Shown: positions 39,211 to 62,538 of the stretch, in pieces | Layout of the letters: the number at the start of each line of letters is the position of its first letter | Numbering within the stretch: the first letter of the stretch is position 1 | Notes under the pieces: generated by a model | Told to the model about the DNA's origin: nothing | Database searches by the model: none | What the model saw: only the letters and a program-made list of their open reading frames with translations | Virus record (IMG/VR): IMGVR_UViG_3300020474_000001 | Coordinates: 143,656 to 207,655 of that record | DNA length: 64,000 nucleotides | Reading direction: 5' to 3' (one strand) | Program-made: the position numbers and the translations under genes

Positions 39211-39456
39211 AATCTTTCAATGACTACTCCGTAATTATAACAAATTTATATATACCTGTCAATATTGTTACCCTTGACCACCCTTTTATATCCCACGGAT
39301 TTTTTTCTGAAACCTTATACAAAAACCCTTTTTGGGTGGCAAAAATTTTTGGCGTTTTTTTATATACATCGCGTTTTGTCACCTCTGTAGGTTAGGGATG
39401 TTTGCTTTTTTTAATACGCGCAAATATAAACAATTAACAATAAATCGTAATTACTG

Positions 39457-39584
39457 TGTATTACTAATAGATAGTGATTTGCTATGTATTACTAATAGAT
39501 AGTGATTTGTTATTTGATAATTAGCAGATTACTATTTGATAATTAAGCGATTGCTATGTAATAAGAATAGATAGCAATCGCTTA
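39457..39584. repeat. AT-rich direct repeats plus a perfect 14-bp inverted repeat
   Basis: TGTATTACTAATAGATAGTGATTTG x2 (39457, 39485); TATTTGATAATTA x2 (39511, 39533); TAAGCGATTGCTAT-13nt-ATAGCAATCGCTTA (39544-39584). Confidence 0.85.
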
Positions 39585-39612
39585 TATATTACTATATTGT
39601 GGATAGTCAATA

Positions 39613-42059: not shown

Positions 42060-42110
42060 GATGATGAAGATGAAGATGATGTTAGCGAAGGTGATGATTG
42101 TGAAGGTGAT

Positions 42111-42347
42111 TCAATACTGTGGATCAATGAACATAACAGTGCAGGATCCACGCGGACGAAGAATAATGGTTTCGCCACATTCTTCTCGGTCACATTTCAC
42201 TCCAGATAATCCTATTGCTTCCTTACATGCTAGGACAATCTGTCGATCAGTGGCACAATCTGAGAGACTAATTGTCTCCCGATCACACCAACTGTAGTTT
42301 GCTTCACCACCGAATGTGTCAGTGTACTCAACCTTAAAGTTCTGCAT
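42111..42347 (-). CDS. Early hypothetical protein (VEYTDTFGGEANYSW motif)
   Basis: Clean ORF; motif recalled from phage early proteins. Confidence 0.7.
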   Translation of the reverse strand: MQNFKVEYTDTFGGEANYSWCDRETISLSDCATDRQIVLACKEAIGLSGVKCDREECGETIILRPRGSCTVMFIDPQY

Positions 42348-42649: not shown

Positions 42650-42738
42650 TTGGTTGGTTGCGATTGATATAAGTATGGGTCAGAGTGGACAACTTATCAA
42701 CCTCAGAGTGACAGTTTGCCAAGTGTCCACTAATGTTA

Positions 42739-43083: not shown

Positions 43084-43199
43084 GGGGTTGATGTAACTGA
43101 ACATATAATCATCGAGATCTCAGGACCAATCAATACCAGCTGTGACAGTTCACCAAGTGTCCACCGATGCCCTCAGAGGCACCTAGGAGGCGCTATAAT

Positions 43200-43272: not shown

Positions 43273-43585
43273 TTATATCAAAATGTAACAATGTGCCAGT
43301 TTGCCAAGTGTCACAGTGCCAGTTCATAAACTGTCCACTCGGTCCTACTGCCTCCCTCCCGTGCTCCACCCTTCCACTGTAGGGGCTGCTGCCCGCTGCT
43401 GCTGTATAAACCACTACGATTTTATAAATTGTCACAAAGACACATAAAGCACTGGCACTGGACAGTTCTCGAAGTGTCCACTGTGTGAAAATCGCGACCT
43501 TATGAATTTTTATGGCGGGGGTGCTTGACAAAACGGCGATCGTGTGATAACATGCTGCCCAAGATCACAAGGTCTCAGAGGGTTT

Positions 43586-43626
43586 CATAAGACTTTACAT
43601 AAGACTTTACATAAGACTTTACATAA
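43586..43626. repeat. 12-bp tandem repeat CATAAGACTTTA x3.4
   Basis: Direct reading of the sequence. Confidence 0.9.
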
Positions 43627-43752
43627 CAATTCAAAATATAAACACTACTTATATTAGATATAAGAAAAACAAATACATCATCCCTTAGCAGACAAATACA
43701 TACATGTCAAGAGATAAGTTACAAAATTTAAGATAATTTTTGTTACATATTA

Positions 43753-43782
43753 TTTTCCACAATTCCACAGAGTTATTCCACA
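43753..43782 (+). repeat. Three TTCCACA (DnaA-box-like) 9-mers after an AT-rich tract
   Basis: TTTTCCACA 43753, AATTCCACA 43761 and TATTCCACA 43774. Confidence 0.6.
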
Positions 43783-44066
43783 AGATGATGATTATGAAGA
43801 TGATGATGATAATGAAGATGATATGTATGCCCGTGAAGATGATACTCTAGATGCTTCGTAGATACTCTGTAGCACCTTCCTAGACACTACTGAGTGCATT
43901 TGAATAAAAAACGAAAGTATATTTATTTAACCATTTTTTATATGTTTTTGCACTATTTTGTAGGTAATAATGCTCAAATATATGACTGAAGATGACATTT
44001 AGTCTTTTCTCCATCACGGGACTGTCATAAATGCCCTGGTGGTCATGCTGCTGCTGAAGATGACAT

Positions 44067-44094
44067 AAAAAAAGGAGAGTATTAACTACTCTCC
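44067..44094 (-). terminator. Intrinsic terminator
   Basis: GGAGAGTA-TTAAC-TACTCTCC with a minus-strand T7 tail, after the His-rich gene. Confidence 0.8.
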
Positions 44095-44112
44095 ATATAT
44101 TATGCTTAATCA

Positions 44113-44355
44113 TCAATGAAAGTGAGTTTTTATTGTATAGTGATAAGATCTAATACCATGATGTTTGTGACCATCTCCGTGCTTATGTTTGTGCTTATGA
44201 GTAATACCTGATTTGAAATGAGTATGCCAATGATTGTGCTTAATTACATGAACATGATAATGTTTATGATGTCCATGTCCATGATGTTTAGTATGAGCAA
44301 ATGCTGGGGCAGTTGTAATCAGCAGACCAGCAGTGAGAAAGAGAAAAGATTTCAT
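44113..44355 (-). CDS. Secreted His-rich peptide
   Basis: Signal peptide MKSFLFLTAGLLITTAPAFA followed by a 60-aa mature part with 23 His. Confidence 0.75.
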   Translation of the reverse strand: MKSFLFLTAGLLITTAPAFAHTKHHGHGHHKHYHVHVIKHNHWHTHFKSGITHKHKHKHGDGHKHHGIRSYHYTIKTHFH

Positions 44356-56920: not shown

Positions 56921-57196
56921 TCAATCTCCAACATACAGAAGCATGTTATCTGCTCCGAGTTTCTTACATCCAGATCCAGTGAATCCGATGCTTCTGACTG
57001 ATCGAAACTCCTCACCATTTGGCGTAGCAAAACTCACCCCATCACGAATGTATTGGTCTTCAATGCTTTTGTCGCAAATAATGACTGGTTTGTCCAAACA
57101 ATCATCTGGAATTTCATCCAGAATTGCTCTCAGTTCCCGATAAGTTCCCAGATCAAAATCTGTGTGGGGAACAATGAATCGCTCATTCATTGTCAT
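56921..57196 (-). CDS. Hypothetical protein
   Basis: ATGA-coupled to the helicase stop. Confidence 0.65.
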   Translation of the reverse strand: MTMNERFIVPHTDFDLGTYRELRAILDEIPDDCLDKPVIICDKSIEDQYIRDGVSFATPNGEEFRSVRSIGFTGSGCKKLGADNMLLYVGD

Positions 57197-58383
57197 TTTT
57201 GTCCGATTGTTCGAGTGAGAGATTGACCTTGGTTGATAGAATCAATCACTGAGGATAAATTCCTAGTGGTTTTGATTCCGACCGTATCGTAGGCACATAC
57301 GGAGATCGTGCCAGCAGATTTAAGAATCACATTATGATTATCAATTCGCAATACTCTACCGATAGATTGTGTCGCTGCTGTAACATTTGGCGAGCGTAGG
57401 AAGATTACTGATTCGAGCGAAGGTATATTGATCCCCTCAGTTAATATATTGTAATGAAGTATTATGAAGCGGCATGTCCCGTTGTCCCCCCATTCTTTTA
57501 ACACTTCAAAGAACTGATCTCGACTAACATGCACATCATTGACGATTGCACCATGTTTTGATGTAATCGAGCACCAATTAAATCCTCTGGATTTTAATTC
57601 CTGGCGGAGATTGGTATTATAAAGCATCTCCATCATCTGTTTTGTGCTCCTGGCACACACTAGAACCTTGGATTTGCCATCATTATCAATAGTTTTGACC
57701 AGATTTTCTGCTTCTATTTCACGATTAAGGTCACTCTTTTTGACCTTAGGGAATGAGCTGACAGACAATTCTGGTGGTAAAATATATCCAGAGTCAATAA
57801 GTTTTTTTGTAACAACTCTATACAAGACATTTCCATACACTTCAATGTCATTCATGCCAGGTAAGTGAGTAACATTAGAGTGGGTAGGAGTAGCAGTGAA
57901 GAAATAACAGCGGTCGCTATTATCAGCAGCAAAGTGCTCCGTGCTAGGGAAAAAGTTTCTCTTAATACTATGGTGTGCTTCATCAAAATAGATTGTATCT
58001 GCATGAATACCTGCCTCCCGAAGTTTCTTAAGAGAGTGATAGGTTGTAAAAAAGATTTGATGATGATATGCTTGATCTGACCACCTGCGAATGTAGTTTG
58101 CATTTGTAGAACTCATGTGGTTGATTTGACCACTATGCACATGCAGCACAGCAGCATTTATTTCATGTTCAATGAACTCTTCGCATAATTGTTGTGCAAG
58201 AAGAATTCTTGGTGCAACAACAATATGCTTACCTGGAGTATCACCAAGAGAAGCAAATCTGTCGATGCAATCTTGCACCATACAAATGGTCTTACCTGAA
58301 CCTGTAGGCATGATAATCTGCCCATGATGATGAGATTTCATTGCGTCACATGCTTGACGCTGATATGGACGTAGATCAATCAT
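57193..58383 (-). CDS. SF2 DEAH-box helicase (ResIII/UvsW-like)
   Basis: MPTGSGKT, FDEAHH, FTAT, LTEGINIP and QSIGRVLR motifs. Confidence 0.92.
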   Translation of the reverse strand: MIDLRPYQRQACDAMKSHHHGQIIMPTGSGKTICMVQDCIDRFASLGDTPGKHIVVAPRILLAQQLCEEFIEHEINAAVLHVHSGQINHMSSTNANYIRRWSDQAYHHQIFFTTYHSLKKLREAGIHADTIYFDEAHHSIKRNFFPSTEHFAADNSDRCYFFTATPTHSNVTHLPGMNDIEVYGNVLYRVVTKKLIDSGYILPPELSVSSFPKVKKSDLNREIEAENLVKTIDNDGKSKVLVCARSTKQMMEMLYNTNLRQELKSRGFNWCSITSKHGAIVNDVHVSRDQFFEVLKEWGDNGTCRFIILHYNILTEGINIPSLESVIFLRSPNVTAATQSIGRVLRIDNHNVILKSAGTISVCAYDTVGIKTTRNLSSVIDSINQGQSLTRTIGQK

Positions 58384-58494
58384 GCCGCTGAAGGTGACTT
58401 TGAAGGTAAATTATTTTGCTAATAATGACACCGAAGGTGACAATGAAGATTATTATGTGTCTGAAGATGACGCTGAAGGTGACTCAAAGATCAA
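58382..58494 (+). repeat. Three 42-43-bp-period units, each with paired GAAGGTGA-like boxes
   Basis: Boxes at 58390/58402, 58433/58445 and 58475/58487. Confidence 0.85.
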
Positions 58495-58735
58495 CACATG
58501 CACCCCGACGCATTTGTTGATAACTGCGACAATTACCAGGTCCACCGATAAAGCAATGCTTACCGTAGTAATAAGCAGCACAATTTCTTTCTCTCAACCC
58601 AAAGATTCGCGCCATTTCTTTCAGTGAAACTTCACCATTTGCACGGCGATACTCATTGAGTTGTTGAGTAATCTTTTTCGCAGCAGATGTGAAGCGAATG
58701 GAATTGCTAGAGTGAACCGTGATTTTACGAATCAT
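58484..58735 (-). CDS. Hypothetical protein with an HTH-like segment
   Basis: VSLKEMARIFGLRERNCAAYY resembles a helix-turn-helix. Confidence 0.55.
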   Translation of the reverse strand: MIRKITVHSSNSIRFTSAAKKITQQLNEYRRANGEVSLKEMARIFGLRERNCAAYYYGKHCFIGGPGNCRSYQQMRRGACVDL

Positions 58736-58842
58736 GATGAAGTTTGATTAACCTTTGTTCAGAGTGTAAATCTCGTGAACATGCAAAACATACTCACGAG
58801 ACAGTTGAGACGCAACGTGCGAAAGGTGAAGCAAATCAGGAA

Positions 58843-59198
58843 TTATTCTTCCTGCTCTACTTCTTTTTCCTTCACAATTCTCGGTCCTTTGAAAACTCGA
58901 TCGTTTTCATAGAAACTTGCCACTCTTTCTCTCCGTGCCTGCAAAAGCATTTCATACTGCTCTTTTTGCTCTTTGGTGTATCTGAAATCTTGATCTTTCC
59001 AGATTTTCCTCAGATCTTGCAGATGATGCAGGACATTTAATGTTTCTTCCATAGTCAGTAATCAAAGTCAGAGTGGATGTATTTTTGAAGATCAAATTTT
59101 TCTCCCTCTTCAATTAGGTCGAAAATTGTTTGATCTTCCATCATGTCGAAACTGATAAGTTCTTCGACTTGATCTTCTGTAAGAAAATTTCCGGACAT
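58843..59198 (-). CDS. Two small ORFs: 58843-59052 and a 47-aa acidic ORF 59055-59198 (not in track)
   Basis: The second reads MSGNFLTEDQVEELISFDMMEDQTIFDLIEEGEKFDLQKYIHSDFDY. Confidence 0.6.
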
Positions 59199-59204
59199 AA
59201 AATC

Positions 59205-59636
59205 TCAGAATGAACAACCAGTTTCTTGAGACAACTGAGCACAGAACTTAGCAGTCAATGGAGATTGAATGCTTTGAAGTTTCTTACGAAGATCATACAT
59301 CTTCACACGATTCTTAGTGAAGTGTGCCAGGCGATCAGAGATGGAGACAAGTTGAAGAAAATTGGAAATCTCGATTGAGTTGGAAGAACCGAGAAGAAAA
59401 TGCATAGCAACAAAAGAATGGTACTTGTTGCTAGAACGGCACTCTTTCAAGACAGAGACAATTTCTTTAGCAACCTCACCTGCTGTTGCAGGATAATAGG
59501 TTGAAAGAAAGTTTTTGGACTCTTGATAGATAAAACCGTCCCAATCAATTTGATATGACTGGGATTGTTGCTGTTCAAGCATGCTCTGGATCGAAGACAA
59601 AGTTGCTTGGATCTGGTCAAGGTCGATGGTTTGCAT
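59205..59636 (-). CDS. Hypothetical protein
   Basis: Downstream of the repeat array and palindrome 59734. Confidence 0.65.
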   Translation of the reverse strand: MQTIDLDQIQATLSSIQSMLEQQQSQSYQIDWDGFIYQESKNFLSTYYPATAGEVAKEIVSVLKECRSSNKYHSFVAMHFLLGSSNSIEISNFLQLVSISDRLAHFTKNRVKMYDLRKKLQSIQSPLTAKFCAQLSQETGCSF

Positions 59637-59649
59637 AACCAGTTGGTTG

Positions 59650-59795
59650 ATGATGACGCTGAAGGTGACTACGAAGGTGACCCCCTCGTGGACACAACAT
59701 ACACCATGATGACGCTGAAGGTGACGTAGGAAGGTGACACTTCATAAACTGTCCACCACTACATGATGACGCTGAAGGTGACGTGTGAAGGTGAC
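59650..59795 (+). repeat. Three 56-57-bp-period units ATGATGACGCTGAAGGTGAC-N3/4-GAAGGTGAC
   Basis: 20-nt core identical at 59650, 59706 and 59763. Confidence 0.92.
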
Positions 59796-62538
59796 CTACA
59801 CCACCTCTACTTCACTCAACGGTGCATCAGAGGTCTCTGTGAGGTCCTCTGAGGTGCCTTCACTCACCTCAGAGGTATCTGCATTACCTTCTGCCATAAT
59901 TTTTTCTTCCTGCCTCTTAAACTCTTCTGACTCCATATATTTCTTGACCATTTCATTGAAACGCTCTTGCTGTTCTCTTCGTTCTCGCATCACATTTTCA
60001 AATTGCCTTTCTCTTTTCTCAAGAATTAGAGAACGACGTGCTCTTTTTGCTTCTCTACGACTAGACATGATCCTCCGATTTTGTGTTTGGTCTTGATTTT
60101 AAAAATACTAATTCATGCCAATAATAATTCTGGCAAACAATTAGCACATGATTTTTTCTATGAAATGTTCCAGCATCAAGTTGATGCGGAAGCTTATTTG
60201 TGACTGCTATTTCAATAGTGAGATATTCATTCTCACTATCAACATAGTAAACCCACCCCTCTATGTCTCTAGTTTCCCACTTAACATAATCATTGACAAG
60301 TGGTTTATACATATGCTAACTCCAGTGGGGTCAATTTTAATTGCATAGCAGTATAAGGACGAGTATCTGAGATGTCTACCTTATTTCCACACTTGGTGGA
60401 GTTAATAGGCGCTGAATACTCTCTCTTTTTTGTATTGTAAAATCCCCAGATTGTTTTTGGTTTGTCATTAGTATAACTAAAATTACCGTGATTGACAAGC
60501 CATATACTAATAATATTCCGTTTAAAATCTTTGACCTCATAGGTGTAACCCTCCGGGGGTTGATGGGGGAAATCATCAGGAATACTCAAGTTCTGGTTGC
60601 ATTGGGCAGTCATCGACAGAGAGTGATTCATAATCAGGATACATTGTGGATACAATGTATGATGCAAGATCTCGTGTAGTAGCAATAACATGCACTTCTA
60701 CCCGATAATACTGGTAATCATCACCAGGAGTGTCTTGCATTGCCAATTCTATTTCAACTCGCCAGACATGACCACGCTTCAGATGGTCCTGATAGTCAAT
60801 AACAACATCAGGTTTCAATTCCCATCGATTCATAACATTTTCCTCGGGTTCAAAATTTCCAATCATGTTGTAAACTCCTCAACAATACCAGATTCAAGAT
60901 CTCCTGCAAGTTCATAGTTCATCGACTTCATGATATTTTCACGAAGCTGACCATAATATTGCTCATTATAGCTTTCATCTTGCTCAGCAATGAGATCAAA
61001 ACATTCTTCATCACTTTCTGCAATTACATTCCAAATACCTCCATATTCAGACGTAGGAAACGGTACAAAATGGTTGACAATGTAGAAAAACTTTGGTGCC
61101 ATTTGTTTCTGTAAATTACCTTTAGATTTTAGTTCAAGATTTAGATTTTGTCAATTGGTCTAATTGACTCTCCAATTCAACTTTAACACTCAATAGGCGA
61201 AAAAACAAAAAACCTCTACTTCTATTTGGAAGAAGTAGAGAGGTTAATTCGTCTATGAGATGAATTGAAGATCTGAGGCGATCCTCGTCCGTCATGATGT
61301 GTAAAACTCCATTAGATAGTAATCAACAGTAATTTCGTGTTCTTTACACTCTTCTTCAACCTGTTGCCAAAATTCAGTTGAAACGGATTGGTCTATCGAA
61401 TTTTTCCAATCGATATCCTTCTTTGAATGCCTGTCGAATGATTGTGTCATAAGAATGCGAAATAAGGGGGATACTTCTATGTAGCAGATAATCTTCACAA
61501 TCTTCTGCTAGTGCTTCTTTATGTTCGTGAGATAACAAATCTAAATCTGGCATCGACATATTTCCCTCTCCTTGATTATTGTAGCATATGGCGGTCATCC
61601 AAACAATGTGTTCGAATCGTTCTTTTTGAACTCCTTACGACACTTTTTTACTTCTCTAAGCTCATCTTTGATCATTTGATAAGCTTCCTCAGCAGAAAGT
61701 TTTCTTGCCATTTCCATGGCAGTAATAATTTCAACACGAGTTCCAAAGTGTTTAAGTGCCTCTTCAAAGCAATTTAATTCTTCATACATTGTCAGTTTTC
61801 CTTTGAATATTATATGTAACAGGATGTATCTGACTAATTTTAGTTTCTAATCGATTCTCCATATCATAGATAGATGACCTGAAATTAAGGTTATCTTCTT
61901 CTAATATTTCGATACGATCTTCAAGTTCTAAAATATAGTCCATAAGACTATCGTCATCATCCCATCTTGTAGTTGGTTCAAAAAATCTTTGAATAAATTT
62001 AATCATGGCAAATAACCTAATGTAATTTATCTGACCATTTTTGGATTCCCATCAAAGTAGAATAAGGAATCCATGCAGGTATCTCATCATCAAACTGTAC
62101 CTGAACTTCAGTTACAATAGTTTGGTGAAATCTATCGTATTTTTTTCTTGTATTTTTTACGAAAGACAAAGGATTCTCCATGTTTGTGTTCGATAACTGC
62201 ATTTTTAGGTTTGATATTATATCTATCAATGATCTTTCTAAGATGTGATTCATCTTGAAAGTGATAGACTACGTTGTTGTATTCCATTCTCCATGGAAAT
62301 GTCTCATATGGAAACTTGTTTACTTTTTTCATATGAGGTTTCAGTGCCAACGTTTAGTTGAAAGATATTCCAACACATCAGCACGAACATCCATCAACTC
62401 ATGGTAACATAGTTGATTATGAGCACACTGACGTAATGATGGATCTGGCTTCAGAACTGACTCTACAAACAGATCTAGTCCACGATTCCACTTATCTTTC
62501 TTTGATTCGTTGTCTTCGATTGTGTTCTGATCTTTCAT
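59796..62538 (-). CDS. Dense run of about 12 small hypothetical ORFs (59796, 60061, 60305, 60576, 60863, 61292, 61374, 61595, 61782, 62017, 62132, 62341)
   Basis: Contiguous or overlapping minus-strand ORFs of 64-128 aa, typical of cyanomyovirus accessory regions. Confidence 0.6.

What the first reader, a model, noticed from the sequence alone, without database searches (positions are those of the whole stretch)
58382..59795. Iteron-like GAAGGTGA direct-repeat arrays in two promoter regions (and a third degenerate site)
Seen: six units in two intergenic clusters (58382-58494, period 42-43; 59650-59795, period 56-57). Each unit has a pair of GAAGGTGA-like boxes 12-13 bp apart, and the 20-nt core ATGATGACGCTGAAGGTGAC is exact three times. 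A related pair lies at 42087 and 42102. All sit directly upstream of minus-strand genes (helicase, ORF 59636, ORF 42059), and the 59.7-kb array is interleaved with the early palindrome and -10 box. On the mRNA strand the box reads GUCACCUUC, close to the 16S anti-SD (AUCACCUCC). An HTH-like ORF (58484-58735) lies between the clusters. Inference: cooperative operator arrays, iterons, or RNA repeat elements in the 5' UTRs.
Basis: partly seen in the sequence, partly recalled or inferred. Interest (0 to 1): 0.62.

Follow-up and report, generated by a model that had tools for sequence, protein, structure and literature searches.

The report
Cyanophage intercistronic 9-nt box arrays
A small group of uncultured marine T4-like cyanophages carries conserved, non-coding arrays of a 9-base box (GTCACCTTC on the mRNA strand) that fill the gaps between certain early genes, including the gap before a UvsW-like helicase; they look like a new gene-expression control element, but the factor that reads them is unknown.

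Summary
The repeats are real. GAAGGTGAC occurs 9 times in the window against 0.3 expected. All but one of the 10 copies in the 207.6-kb phage genome lie in two gaps, 58384-58483 and 59637-59795. Two degenerate arrays lie at 42060-42110 and about 43780-43850. The phage is a T4-like cyanomyovirus. All boxes read GTCAYCTTC on the gene-sense (minus) strand, in a 12-nt register. Three of the four arrays start directly at the upstream stop codon, and three run up to the next ATG. The three units of the 59.7-kb array fall in three reading frames, so they do not code. Between lineages the boxes differ at 4-6% of positions and the spacers at 28-32% (p about 3e-4). Copy number varies from 3 to 4 units. 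The 58.4-kb array exists as two alleles of identical length and register that assort independently of the flanking genes. No sigma-70 promoter, terminator, Rfam family or significant RNA fold was found. The HTH-like 83-aa ORF also occurs elsewhere without boxes. I favour a single-stranded RNA element at Shine-Dalgarno-less start sites (0.38) over DNA operator arrays (0.28). An origin with iterons, a CRISPR-like array and a coding role are unlikely. I could obtain no read evidence.

The parts
59637..59795 (-). Cluster B. It has three 33-34-nt units (59795-59762, 59738-59705, 59681-59649). Each is box, N3-4, box, AGC, then GTCATCAT(G/C). The units are separated by two unrelated 23-nt spacers and followed by a 12-nt leader before ATG 59636. 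Exact boxes lie at 59795-59787, 59782-59774, 59738-59730, 59725-59717, 59681-59673 and 59669-59661.
58384..58483 (-). Cluster A. Seven 12-nt boxes in groups of 2+3+2 (58483-58475, 58471-58463, 58453-58445, 58441-58433, 58429-58421, 58410-58402, 58398-58390) fill the whole gap from the TGA of the 83-aa ORF to the helicase ATG. Start-to-start spacings are 12, 18, 12, 12, 19 and 12 nt.
42060..42110 (-). Third array, of the ATCACCTTC / ATCATCTTC type. It fills the 51-nt gap between the TGA of ORF 42111-42347 and ATG 42059. G content is 2% and the predicted fold energy is 0 kcal/mol.
43780..43850 (-). Fourth, degenerate array of the ATCATCTTC type. It starts about 30-36 nt after the stop of ORF 43880-44116, and no start codon abuts it. 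Copy number differs in L116.
59750..59756 (-). GTGGACA, the left arm of a conserved inverted repeat, in spacer 1 of cluster B.
59688..59694 (-). TGTCCAC, the right arm of the inverted repeat, in spacer 2. It is followed by a G-run that can pair with the next box.
59759..59764 (-). ATG-TAG start-stop at the end of unit 1. Unit 2 ends in ATG 59707-59705, which opens a 12-codon mini-ORF that stops at the TAG formed by the unit 3 linker in every lineage.
57193..58383 (-). SF2 helicase (ResIII/DEAD/Helicase_C; phrog_16). It is 44-46% identical to cyanophage helicase/UvsW genes and has no SD; the last box ends 6 nt before its ATG.
59205..59636 (-). 143-aa all-helical ORFan downstream of cluster B. 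It belongs to no family. Only near-identical relatives and four remote (28-33%) homologues exist.
58484..58735 (-). 83-aa ORF with a three-helix HTH-like core. Its stop codon abuts cluster A. It is widespread in marine cyanophage contigs, where it occurs without boxes.
59796..60068 (-). 90-aa ORF with an arginine-rich N-terminus and an acidic tail. Its TAG abuts cluster B. It is restricted to this clade.

Best explanation
The arrays are cis-acting, non-coding recognition elements built from a 9-nt box (GUCAYCUUC on the mRNA) in a 12-nt register. They sit in the intercistronic gaps of polycistronic early transcripts of a T4-like cyanomyovirus. I propose that they act on the RNA. They would form a G-poor, unstructured, multivalent landing or operator site at Shine-Dalgarno-less translation initiation regions. 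An unidentified sequence-specific factor would read them: the 30S subunit with S1, the phage RegA, or a clade-specific protein such as the 90-aa or 143-aa ORF. This would set how much of the downstream cistron is translated (the UvsW-like helicase, the 143-aa ORFan cassette, ORF 42059). In cluster B, the ATG-bearing unit tails would form a chain of start-stop and mini-ORFs between the upstream stop codon and the real start. Because the units are near-identical, they also serve as recombination points, so the arrays mark mosaic junctions. What is shown: the repeats are real, restricted to four gaps and one strand, non-coding, selectively conserved, and discordant with their flanks.
For: - **Strand and location.** All boxes in four arrays and in every relative are in sense orientation. 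The relaxed box occurs 17 times in sense and 2 times in antisense orientation in crude intergenic DNA, with all 17 sense copies in three of these arrays.
- **Gap filling.** Three of four arrays begin at the first base after the upstream stop codon. The last box or tail ends 0-12 nt before the ATG of the helicase, ORF 42059 and the 143-aa ORF.
- **Not coding.** The three units of cluster B fall in three reading frames, and the peptides are not conserved.
- **Selection.** Boxes differ at 2-3 of 54 positions between lineages and spacers at 19-22 of 69 (Fisher p = 2.5e-4 to 4.8e-4). The degenerate boxes in the window's cluster A are perfect boxes in the other allele.
- **ATGs in the unit tails.** In every lineage all units except the last carry an ATG at the tail, although the tail sequence changed. 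The unit 2 mini-ORF ends at the TAG of the unit 3 linker in most lineages (not in L219 or L257).
- **Same context at real starts.** Real starts share this context, including a different downstream gene in L116 and a gene in an unrelated cyanophage contig, L226.
- **Little predicted structure.** The fold energy is 0.0 kcal/mol for the 51-nt third array. Cluster A ranks 9th least structured of 89 gaps. Z-scores are +0.6 and +1.0.
- **No promoter or terminator.** No sigma-70 promoter lies on the gene strand in either cluster, and no terminator was found. The nearest strong promoter is upstream, at 61154-61126.
- **Flexible spacing.** Box spacing is 12 or 13 nt, and unit spacing is 55-57 nt.
- **Weak SD use.** Only 74 of 267 crude ORFs have a core SD 4-mer, and the phage encodes RegA.
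Against:
- The two alleles of cluster A keep exactly 100 nt and the same box register despite about 20% divergence. Its seven boxes fall within about 1.5 bp of one helical face. Both points fit a DNA-protein architecture better than a flexible RNA site.
- Cluster B is interleaved with a palindrome that recurs in other gaps and looks like a DNA site.
- The fourth array is not next to a start codon.
- Most genes of this phage do without any such array, so general S1 or 30S recruitment cannot be the whole story.
- No known RNA-binding fold (CSD, RRM) is encoded in the genome.
- The specificity of cyanophage RegA is unknown, and the known T4 RegA sites are AU-rich (from memory).
- The mini-ORFs may be meaningless by-products of CAT-rich tails.
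Confidence: 0.38

Rival explanations
1. DNA-level binding-site arrays. A phage (or host) DNA-binding protein polymerises on the 12-bp boxes. It acts either as an operator or as a roadblock that limits read-through transcription from upstream early promoters into the helicase and the ORFan cassette, which would time their expression.
For: - The arrangement is direct repeats in two main clusters flanking a 1.15-kb cassette that encodes an HTH-like 83-aa protein.
- Cluster A keeps exactly the same length and register in two alleles that are 77-81% identical, and its boxes lie roughly on one helical face.
- Cluster B is interleaved with the GTGGACA/TGTCCAC palindrome, which recurs in other intergenic gaps and upstream of remote homologues of the 143-aa ORF.
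- The clade-restricted 143-aa and 90-aa ORFs lie next to the arrays.
- Most known repeat arrays in phage intergenic DNA are protein-binding DNA sites (general knowledge).
Against: - No promoter to operate on was found inside the clusters.
- Homologues of the 83-aa ORF in other contexts lack boxes, and remote homologues of the 143-aa ORF lack arrays.
- Box spacing varies between 12 and 13 bp, and the units in cluster B are out of helical phase (57 bp is about 5.4 turns).
- Strict sense orientation, G depletion, abutment to stop and start codons and the conserved tail ATGs are all unexplained by this model.
- No RHH_1 (Pfam PF01402) match was found in the genome.
Confidence: 0.28
2. The arrays have no trans-acting reader. 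They are recombination linkers or minisatellites that arise by slippage and gene conversion and persist because they promote modular gene shuffling. They would be functionally analogous to the PeSL cassettes of T4-type phages, or simply tolerated filler.
For: - Copy number varies: cluster B has 3 or 4 units, and the fourth array has an extra unit in L116.
- L219 and L230 carry a perfect tandem 12-mer duplication.
- Unit linkers and tails evolve in concert within lineages.
- Every array with data sits at a mosaic junction. Third-position divergence is 47-50% in the 90-aa ORF and 10-13% in the 143-aa ORF. The gene downstream of the third array is replaced in L116. The cluster A alleles assort independently of the flanks.
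- PeSLs are a documented precedent (PMC4122927).
Against: - The 9-nt boxes are conserved between lineages far more than the spacers are.
- Boxes are re-created at several positions at once, and the strand polarity is strict.
- Unit spacers are unrelated to each other, so the units did not arise by simple tandem duplication of a 57-nt unit.
- Recombination needs only homology, not a fixed box word.
Confidence: 0.17
3. The arrays are iterons of a replication origin, by analogy with the 12-nt direct repeats at T4 oriE or with plasmid and lambda iterons. They lie beside the UvsW-like helicase gene.
For: The arrays are direct repeats in a 12-nt register. T4 oriE holds evenly spaced 12-nt repeats whose word, GTTGAAGGTAAT, resembles GCTGAAGGTGAC at 9 of 12 positions (PMC3016281). 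They are also close to a replication and recombination helicase.
Against: - The T4 repeats lie inside gene 5 at a 24-nt period and coincide with the V-E/K-G-N coding repeat of the gp5 beta-helix. Their role in origin function is itself unproven.
- Clusters A and B have no AT-rich unwinding element beside them.
- No initiator-like gene was found.
- GC skew is monotonic across the genome.
- Four dispersed arrays that abut stop and start codons are not expected of an origin.
Confidence: 0.07
4. The repeats are translated. They could be hydrophobic C-terminal extensions made by stop-codon read-through, mini-proteins, or acidic peptides encoded on the + strand.
For: The frame after the TGA of the 83-aa ORF stays open for 33 codons and reads as a hydrophobic segment. 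The 51-nt third array is in frame between its two flanking ORFs. Gene callers extended the 143-aa ORF into cluster B, giving 167-aa and 184-aa products.
Against: The units of cluster B fall in three different frames. Cluster A changes frame at its 7-nt linker. 15 of 41 residues of the + strand reading differ between alleles. Nothing points to a different genetic code; the only TGA=W call came from an outside gene caller.
Confidence: 0.04
5. Cluster B is a CRISPR-like mini-array or a solitary-repeat decoy: 34-nt repeats, 23-nt unique spacers, and a new unit added at one end.
For: Repeat and spacer sizes are constant. The extra unit in L030, L240 and L257 sits at the upstream end and carries a novel spacer.
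Against: - Spacer 1 carries GTGGACAGTTT, a word also found upstream of remote homologues of the 143-aa ORF, so it looks like inherited leader sequence rather than a captured protospacer.
- Cluster A is not built as repeats and spacers.
- The 20-nt core matches no array in 185,579 species genomes, only six single chance hits.
- Rfam gave no match.
Confidence: 0.02

Closest known systems
PeSL cassettes (promoter-early stem-loop) of T4-type phages (Arbiol 2010; Comeau 2014, PMC4122927)
   Same: Both are conserved short intergenic motifs in the hyperplastic early regions of T4-like myoviruses. Both lie next to ORFans that differ between close relatives and sit at recombination junctions. The cluster A alleles assort independently of their flanks, and the gene after the third array is swapped in L116.
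   Different: A PeSL is a near-consensus sigma-70 promoter plus a stem-loop. The arrays here have neither. They are direct 12-nt box repeats with strict strand polarity.
T4 oriE 12-nt direct repeats ('iterons')
   Same: Both occur in the T4-like lineage, have a 12-nt word and share a GAAGGT core (9 of 12 positions identical). The function is undefined in T4 as well.
   Different: The T4 repeats lie inside gene 5 at a 24-nt period and encode the gp5 beta-helix repeat. The arrays here are intergenic and non-coding, and they occur at four sites.
Translational operators and multivalent single-stranded RNA sites (T4 RegA and gp32 operators; TRAP and CsrA-type repeated motifs)
   Same: These are repeated short motifs in unstructured RNA that overlap or abut the start codon of the regulated cistron. 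The phage encodes RegA.
   Different: The motif is unrelated to known RegA, TRAP or CsrA sites (from memory). The 9-nt box in a 12-nt register is larger than those motifs. No binder has been identified.
Direct-repeat operator or centromere arrays bound by small HTH or RHH proteins (R1 ParR/parC, P2 Cox, 186 Apl, omega heptads)
   Same: These are two clusters of tandem direct repeats, with a small HTH-like gene between them here.
   Different: The period is 12-13 bp rather than 7 or 10-11 bp. There is no promoter core between the clusters, no RHH_1 (Pfam PF01402) match in the genome and no co-occurrence with the HTH-like ORF. The phage is lytic and T4-like.
Rho utilisation (rut) sites
   Same: Both are C-rich, G-poor, unstructured RNA with a periodicity of about 12 nt, placed right after a stop codon.
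   Different: No Rho RNA-binding domain was found in the phage or in the Synechococcus control genome. Cyanobacteria are reported to lack Rho (from memory).

Membership tests
Origin iterons (plasmid, lambda or T4 oriE type) | Several direct repeats of one word in regular spacing | tested here: met
   Seven boxes in cluster A and six boxes plus three tails in cluster B, in a 12-13-nt register
Origin iterons (plasmid, lambda or T4 oriE type) | Adjacent AT-rich unwinding element and a cognate initiator gene | tested here: not met
   Clusters A and B have no AT-rich block beside them. The neighbouring ORFs have no Rep or initiator family hit.
Origin iterons (plasmid, lambda or T4 oriE type) | Origin activity or a compositional skew switch | tested here: inconclusive
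   Cumulative GC skew is monotonic, but it is dominated by one-strand transcription. Replication itself cannot be tested here.
PeSL mobile regulatory cassette | Sigma-70-like early promoter within the motif | tested here: not met
   No promoter-like site lies on the gene strand within 58384-58483 or 59637-59795
PeSL mobile regulatory cassette | Stem-loop or terminator within the motif | tested here: not met
   No terminator was found in the clusters. Fold z-scores range from -1.5 to +1.0.
PeSL mobile regulatory cassette | Located at junctions of shuffled ORFs in hyperplastic regions | tested here: met
   Divergence jumps across clusters A and B, the gene after the third array is swapped, and the cluster A alleles are discordant with their flanks
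CRISPR array / solitary repeat unit | Identical repeats separated by unique spacers of constant length | tested here: inconclusive
   Cluster B fits (34-nt units, 23-nt spacers). Cluster A and the third and fourth arrays do not.
CRISPR array / solitary repeat unit | Repeat matches a CRISPR repeat of a host, or cas genes lie nearby; spacers are of foreign origin | tested here: not met
   The 20-nt core gave only 6 single chance hits in 185,579 species genomes. Spacer 1 shares a word with the upstream regions of remote homologues. No cas-like family was seen in the neighbouring ORFs.
Known structured RNA families (Rfam 15) | Match to a covariance model | tested here: not met
   No match at gathering score over the whole window, and none with E<=1 over 58000-60200
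Rho-dependent terminator (rut) | C-rich, G-poor, unstructured RNA about 80 nt long | tested here: met
   Cluster A has 13% G, the third array 2% G, and both are near-unstructured
Rho-dependent terminator (rut) | Rho factor available in the host or the phage | tested here: not met
   PF07497 is absent from the phage and from the Synechococcus elongatus control, but present in 9 other control genomes
Operator array with cognate HTH regulator | Regulator gene and its sites co-occur across relatives | tested here: not met
   Homologues of the 83-aa ORF in L222-L226 and L232-L237 have no box arrays. Remote homologues of the 143-aa ORF have none either.
Operator array with cognate HTH regulator | Specific protein-DNA binding | not testable with these tools
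   Needs EMSA or footprinting

The most novel reading that the evidence does not exclude
The units are self-contained, Shine-Dalgarno-independent translation initiation modules. Each has one to three copies of a word that mimics the 16S anti-SD tail (7-8 of 9 positions identical), followed by CAUC-AUG. Strung together, they would form a relay of start-stop and mini-ORFs that carries ribosomes across long intercistronic gaps. The same modules would be exchanged between phages as portable cassettes that combine a ribosome entry site with a recombination point. That would be a new kind of translational control element in cyanophages, whose hosts make little use of SD pairing.
Probability: 0.12. 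Interest if true: 0.75.

Novelty: new variant of a known kind. Interest (0 to 1): 0.42.

Why it matters
T4-like cyanophages lack the MotA/AsiA middle-mode system of T4 (from memory), and how they time replication and recombination genes is poorly understood. Here a clade-specific, selectively conserved element sits exactly at the start of a UvsW-like helicase gene and of an ORFan cassette. It offers a compact, mutable handle for testing post-transcriptional or roadblock control in these phages. The same element marks recombination junctions, so it may also show how regulatory words double as shuffling points in the hyperplastic regions of abundant marine viruses. Its reach is limited. It was found only in one narrow, uncultured lineage (at least 88% nucleotide identity), and no binder or transcript data exist.

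Tried and rejected
- **Near-identity search in cultured phages.** The 4-kb region gave nothing. The 143-aa and 90-aa ORFs also gave nothing by tblastn.
- **Pattern scans.** Scans of viral contigs returned about 200 loci. All but the true relatives were antisense strands of acidic coding repeats (GAA GGT GAC = E G D) and were rejected as chance.
- **Species genomes.** The scan gave six single chance hits in unrelated high-GC bacteria.
- **Rfam.** No match at gathering score or at E<=1.
- **RNA folding.** No fold was significant. A 7-bp hairpin between the G-run and the first box of unit 3 is kept in relatives but is weak (z = -1.5).
- **Structure models.** The models of the 143-aa ORF (pLDDT 50) and the 83-aa ORF (pLDDT 58) are poor. 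Foldseek on the 83-aa model gave only weak HTH or winged-helix hits (E >= 0.15), and the 143-aa model was not searched. The protein atlas gave no usable hit.
- **Co-occurrence tests.** Neither the 83-aa nor the 143-aa ORF co-occurs with box arrays.
- **Literature.** Searches for a described cyanophage motif of this kind found none. Doron 2016 and Vaiskunaite 1999 are not held.
- **16S rRNA resemblance.** From memory, parts of the unit resemble words in a conserved 16S rRNA segment. I did not test this and I give it no weight.
- **GC skew.** It was uninformative.


Full report
**Source of the window.** The window is the last 64 kb of a 207,655-bp IMG/VR virus record.
- Its portal protein is 78% identical to that of Synechococcus phage S-SM2 (Kyanoviridae).
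- Sheath, baseplate, terminase and scaffold genes are T4-like.
- The helicase at 57193-58383 is 44-46% identical to cyanophage helicase/UvsW genes.
- Nearly all genes run on the minus strand, so I describe the element on that strand.
- A Tara Oceans contig (L241) is 100% identical over 5.8 kb.

- GAAGGTGAC is exact 9 times in the window against 0.3 expected.
- It is exact 10 times in the whole genome, and 9 of those copies lie in two gaps.
- The 20-nt core is exact three times.
- A relaxed box occurs 17 times in sense orientation in crude intergenic DNA, always inside three of the arrays described here. It occurs twice in antisense orientation.

**Cluster B (59637-59795).** On the sense strand the box is GTCAYCTTC in a 12-nt register. 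The cluster has three units, each made of box, N3-4, box, AGC, then GTCATCAT(G/C). The units are separated by 23-nt spacers that are unrelated to each other.

**Cluster A (58384-58483).** An alignment of nine loci shows seven 12-nt boxes in groups of 2+3+2, joined by 6-7-nt linkers. They fill the whole gap from the TGA of the 83-aa ORF to the helicase ATG.

**Two weaker arrays.**
- The third array (42060-42110) fills a 51-nt gap up to ATG 42059.
- The fourth (about 43780-43850) follows the stop of ORF 43880-44116.

**The arrays do not code.** The three units of cluster B fall in three reading frames. Cluster A changes frame at its 7-nt linker. The peptides read from any frame are not conserved between lineages. 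Other database hits to the box pair are antisense strands of acidic coding repeats, because GAA GGT GAC encodes E-G-D. They are chance matches.

**The arrays are conserved in a narrow clade.** Relatives with the arrays all share at least 88% nucleotide identity: L030/L097/L240, L238, L087/L219, L220, L230/L231/L239 and L257.
- Between lineages the 9-nt boxes of cluster B differ at 2-3 of 54 positions, and the remaining positions at 19-22 of 69 (Fisher p = 2.5e-4 to 4.8e-4).
- Linkers and tails change in concert within a lineage. ACAC and CTAC both become AGC, and box spacing changes from 13 to 12 nt. So the boxes are under selection, and the rest is homogenised by conversion.
- Copy number varies. 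L030, L240 and L257 have four units, and L116 has an extra unit in the fourth array.

**Cluster A has two alleles.** They are 77-81% identical and keep the same 100-nt length and box register. The degenerate boxes of the window allele (ATAATCTTC, TTTACCTTC) are perfect boxes in the other allele.

**The arrays sit at mosaic junctions.**
- The window's cluster A is 97% identical to that of L219, although the adjacent 83-aa ORF is only 73% identical.
- Cluster A of L257 is 96% identical to that of L230, although its flanks are of the window type.
- Third-position divergence jumps from 47-50% in the 90-aa ORF to 10-13% in the 143-aa ORF across cluster B.
- The third array is identical in L116 and L250 up to 10-13 nt before the ATG, and a different gene follows it there.

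**What is absent.**
- No sigma-70-like promoter lies on the gene strand in either cluster, and no terminator. The nearest strong promoter is upstream, at 61154-61126.
- Rfam gave no match, and no RNA fold was significant.
- The third array folds at 0.0 kcal/mol with 2% G, and cluster A is the 9th least structured of 89 gaps.
- GC skew shows no sign of an origin.

**Candidate readers.**
- *The 83-aa ORF.* It has a three-helix core with weak HTH-type structural matches. It has 72 homologues, and those in other cyanophage contexts have no boxes.
- *The 143-aa ORF.* By word search it has only near-identical relatives. An exhaustive profile search adds four homologues at 28-33% identity. Their upstream regions lack arrays. 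They do share the GTGGACA palindrome and a word of the type GGGG-CATCATT 45-60 nt before the ATG, from which the boxes may have grown.
- *The 90-aa ORF.* It is arginine-rich at its N-terminus and restricted to this clade.
- *Elsewhere in the genome.* The phage encodes RegA. It has no CSD, RRM, Rho or RHH_1 domain.

**Mechanism.** Two readings remain close.
- *For RNA-level action:* strict sense polarity; arrays that run from stop codon to start codon; G depletion and lack of structure; flexible spacing; weak SD use in this phage (74 of 267 ORFs).
- *Also for RNA-level action:* the unit tails look like start sites. In cluster B all units except the last carry an ATG at the tail in every lineage, although the tail sequence changed. 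In the window lineage unit 1 is an ATG-TAG start-stop, and unit 2 opens a 12-codon mini-ORF. That mini-ORF ends at the TAG of the unit 3 linker in most lineages, but not in L219 or L257. Real starts share this context: the helicase, ORF 42059, the replaced gene in L116 and a gene in L226.
- *For DNA-level action:* the fixed length and register of cluster A, with its boxes roughly on one helical face; the interleaved palindrome in cluster B; and the general precedent of repeat operators.
- I therefore commit to an intercistronic RNA element that controls translation, with confidence 0.38. DNA operator or roadblock arrays get 0.28, and a passive recombination linker gets 0.17.

**Iterons.** The T4 oriE '12-nt iterons' (PMC3016281) turn out to be the coding repeat of the gp5 beta-helix at a 24-nt period. 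The arrays here have no unwinding element and no initiator gene.

**CRISPR-like reading.** It is rejected. Spacer 1 shares a word with the upstream regions of remote homologues, and no genome holds a matching array.

**Rho-type terminator.** The composition fits, but Rho is absent from the phage and from the cyanobacterial control genome.

**Limits.** All relatives are close, so the lineages compared are few and not independent. Gene calls used for genome-wide counts are crude longest-ORF calls. Statements about S1, RegA specificity, Rho distribution and MotA/AsiA rest on my own knowledge, not on tests made here.

Noticed in passing
window 42650-42738, 43105-43166, 43383-43500, and 59688-59756: A recurrent palindrome, GTGGACA(C) ... 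(C)TGTCAC, lies in several early intergenic gaps. 7 of the 25 genome copies of GTGGACA are intergenic. The same word lies upstream of remote homologues of the 143-aa ORF in L245 and L248.
   Followed up: partly
window 43383-43879: A 497-nt non-coding stretch holds a box array, an AT-rich block with TTGACA, and a perfect 12-nt tandem repeat (CATAAGACTTTA x3.4 at 43586-43626). In L116 and L250 that tandem repeat is replaced by a different 10-nt repeat, while the AT-rich block is highly conserved. This is a better origin or control-hub candidate than clusters A and B.
   Followed up: partly
window 39211-39612: A 402-nt non-coding stretch holds a direct repeat of about 27 nt and a long palindrome, followed by a strong TTGACA / TATAAT-like promoter region.
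   Followed up: no
window 44113-44355 (-): An 80-aa ORF with a signal-like N-terminus and an extremely His-rich body (runs of HxH, HKH). It may be a metal-binding secreted protein.
   Followed up: no
L099 3394-3430, 7233-7270, 7798-7835; L101 2280-2320, 3390-3430: Synechococcus phages S-SM2 and SynMITS9220M01 carry their own recurrent intergenic word (a G-run, TCGC, TAAAG.GTCCCTATAGTGT) upstream of several early genes, including the helicase. So different cyanomyovirus lineages have different intergenic cassettes.
   Followed up: no
L243 5427-5558 (T4 gene 5): The 12-nt 'iterons' of T4 oriE coincide with the V-E/K-G-N coding repeat of the gp5 C-terminal beta-helix, at a 24-nt period.
   Followed up: yes
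L226 2034-2080: An unrelated cyanophage contig has (TCACCT)x4 after GTCATC, right after a stop codon and ending in ATTATC-ATG. Box-like tracts before SD-less starts may therefore occur outside this clade.
   Followed up: partly
G000:C1:125044-125406 (-), outside the window: The phage encodes a RegA translational repressor homologue (PF01818, E = 4e-44).
   Followed up: partly
L227 1523-1864, L228, L229: An outside gene caller extended the 83-aa family by 30 residues by reading TGA as W. The extension runs through GGTGGGCAG / CTGCCCACC palindromes and is most likely a calling artefact, not a different genetic code.
   Followed up: partly
window 58425-58453 (+): The promoter scan finds an antisense sigma-70-like site (ATGACA, 17 nt, GATTAT) inside cluster A that points into the 83-aa ORF. 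It scores 9 of 12 and is not obviously conserved in the other allele.
   Followed up: no
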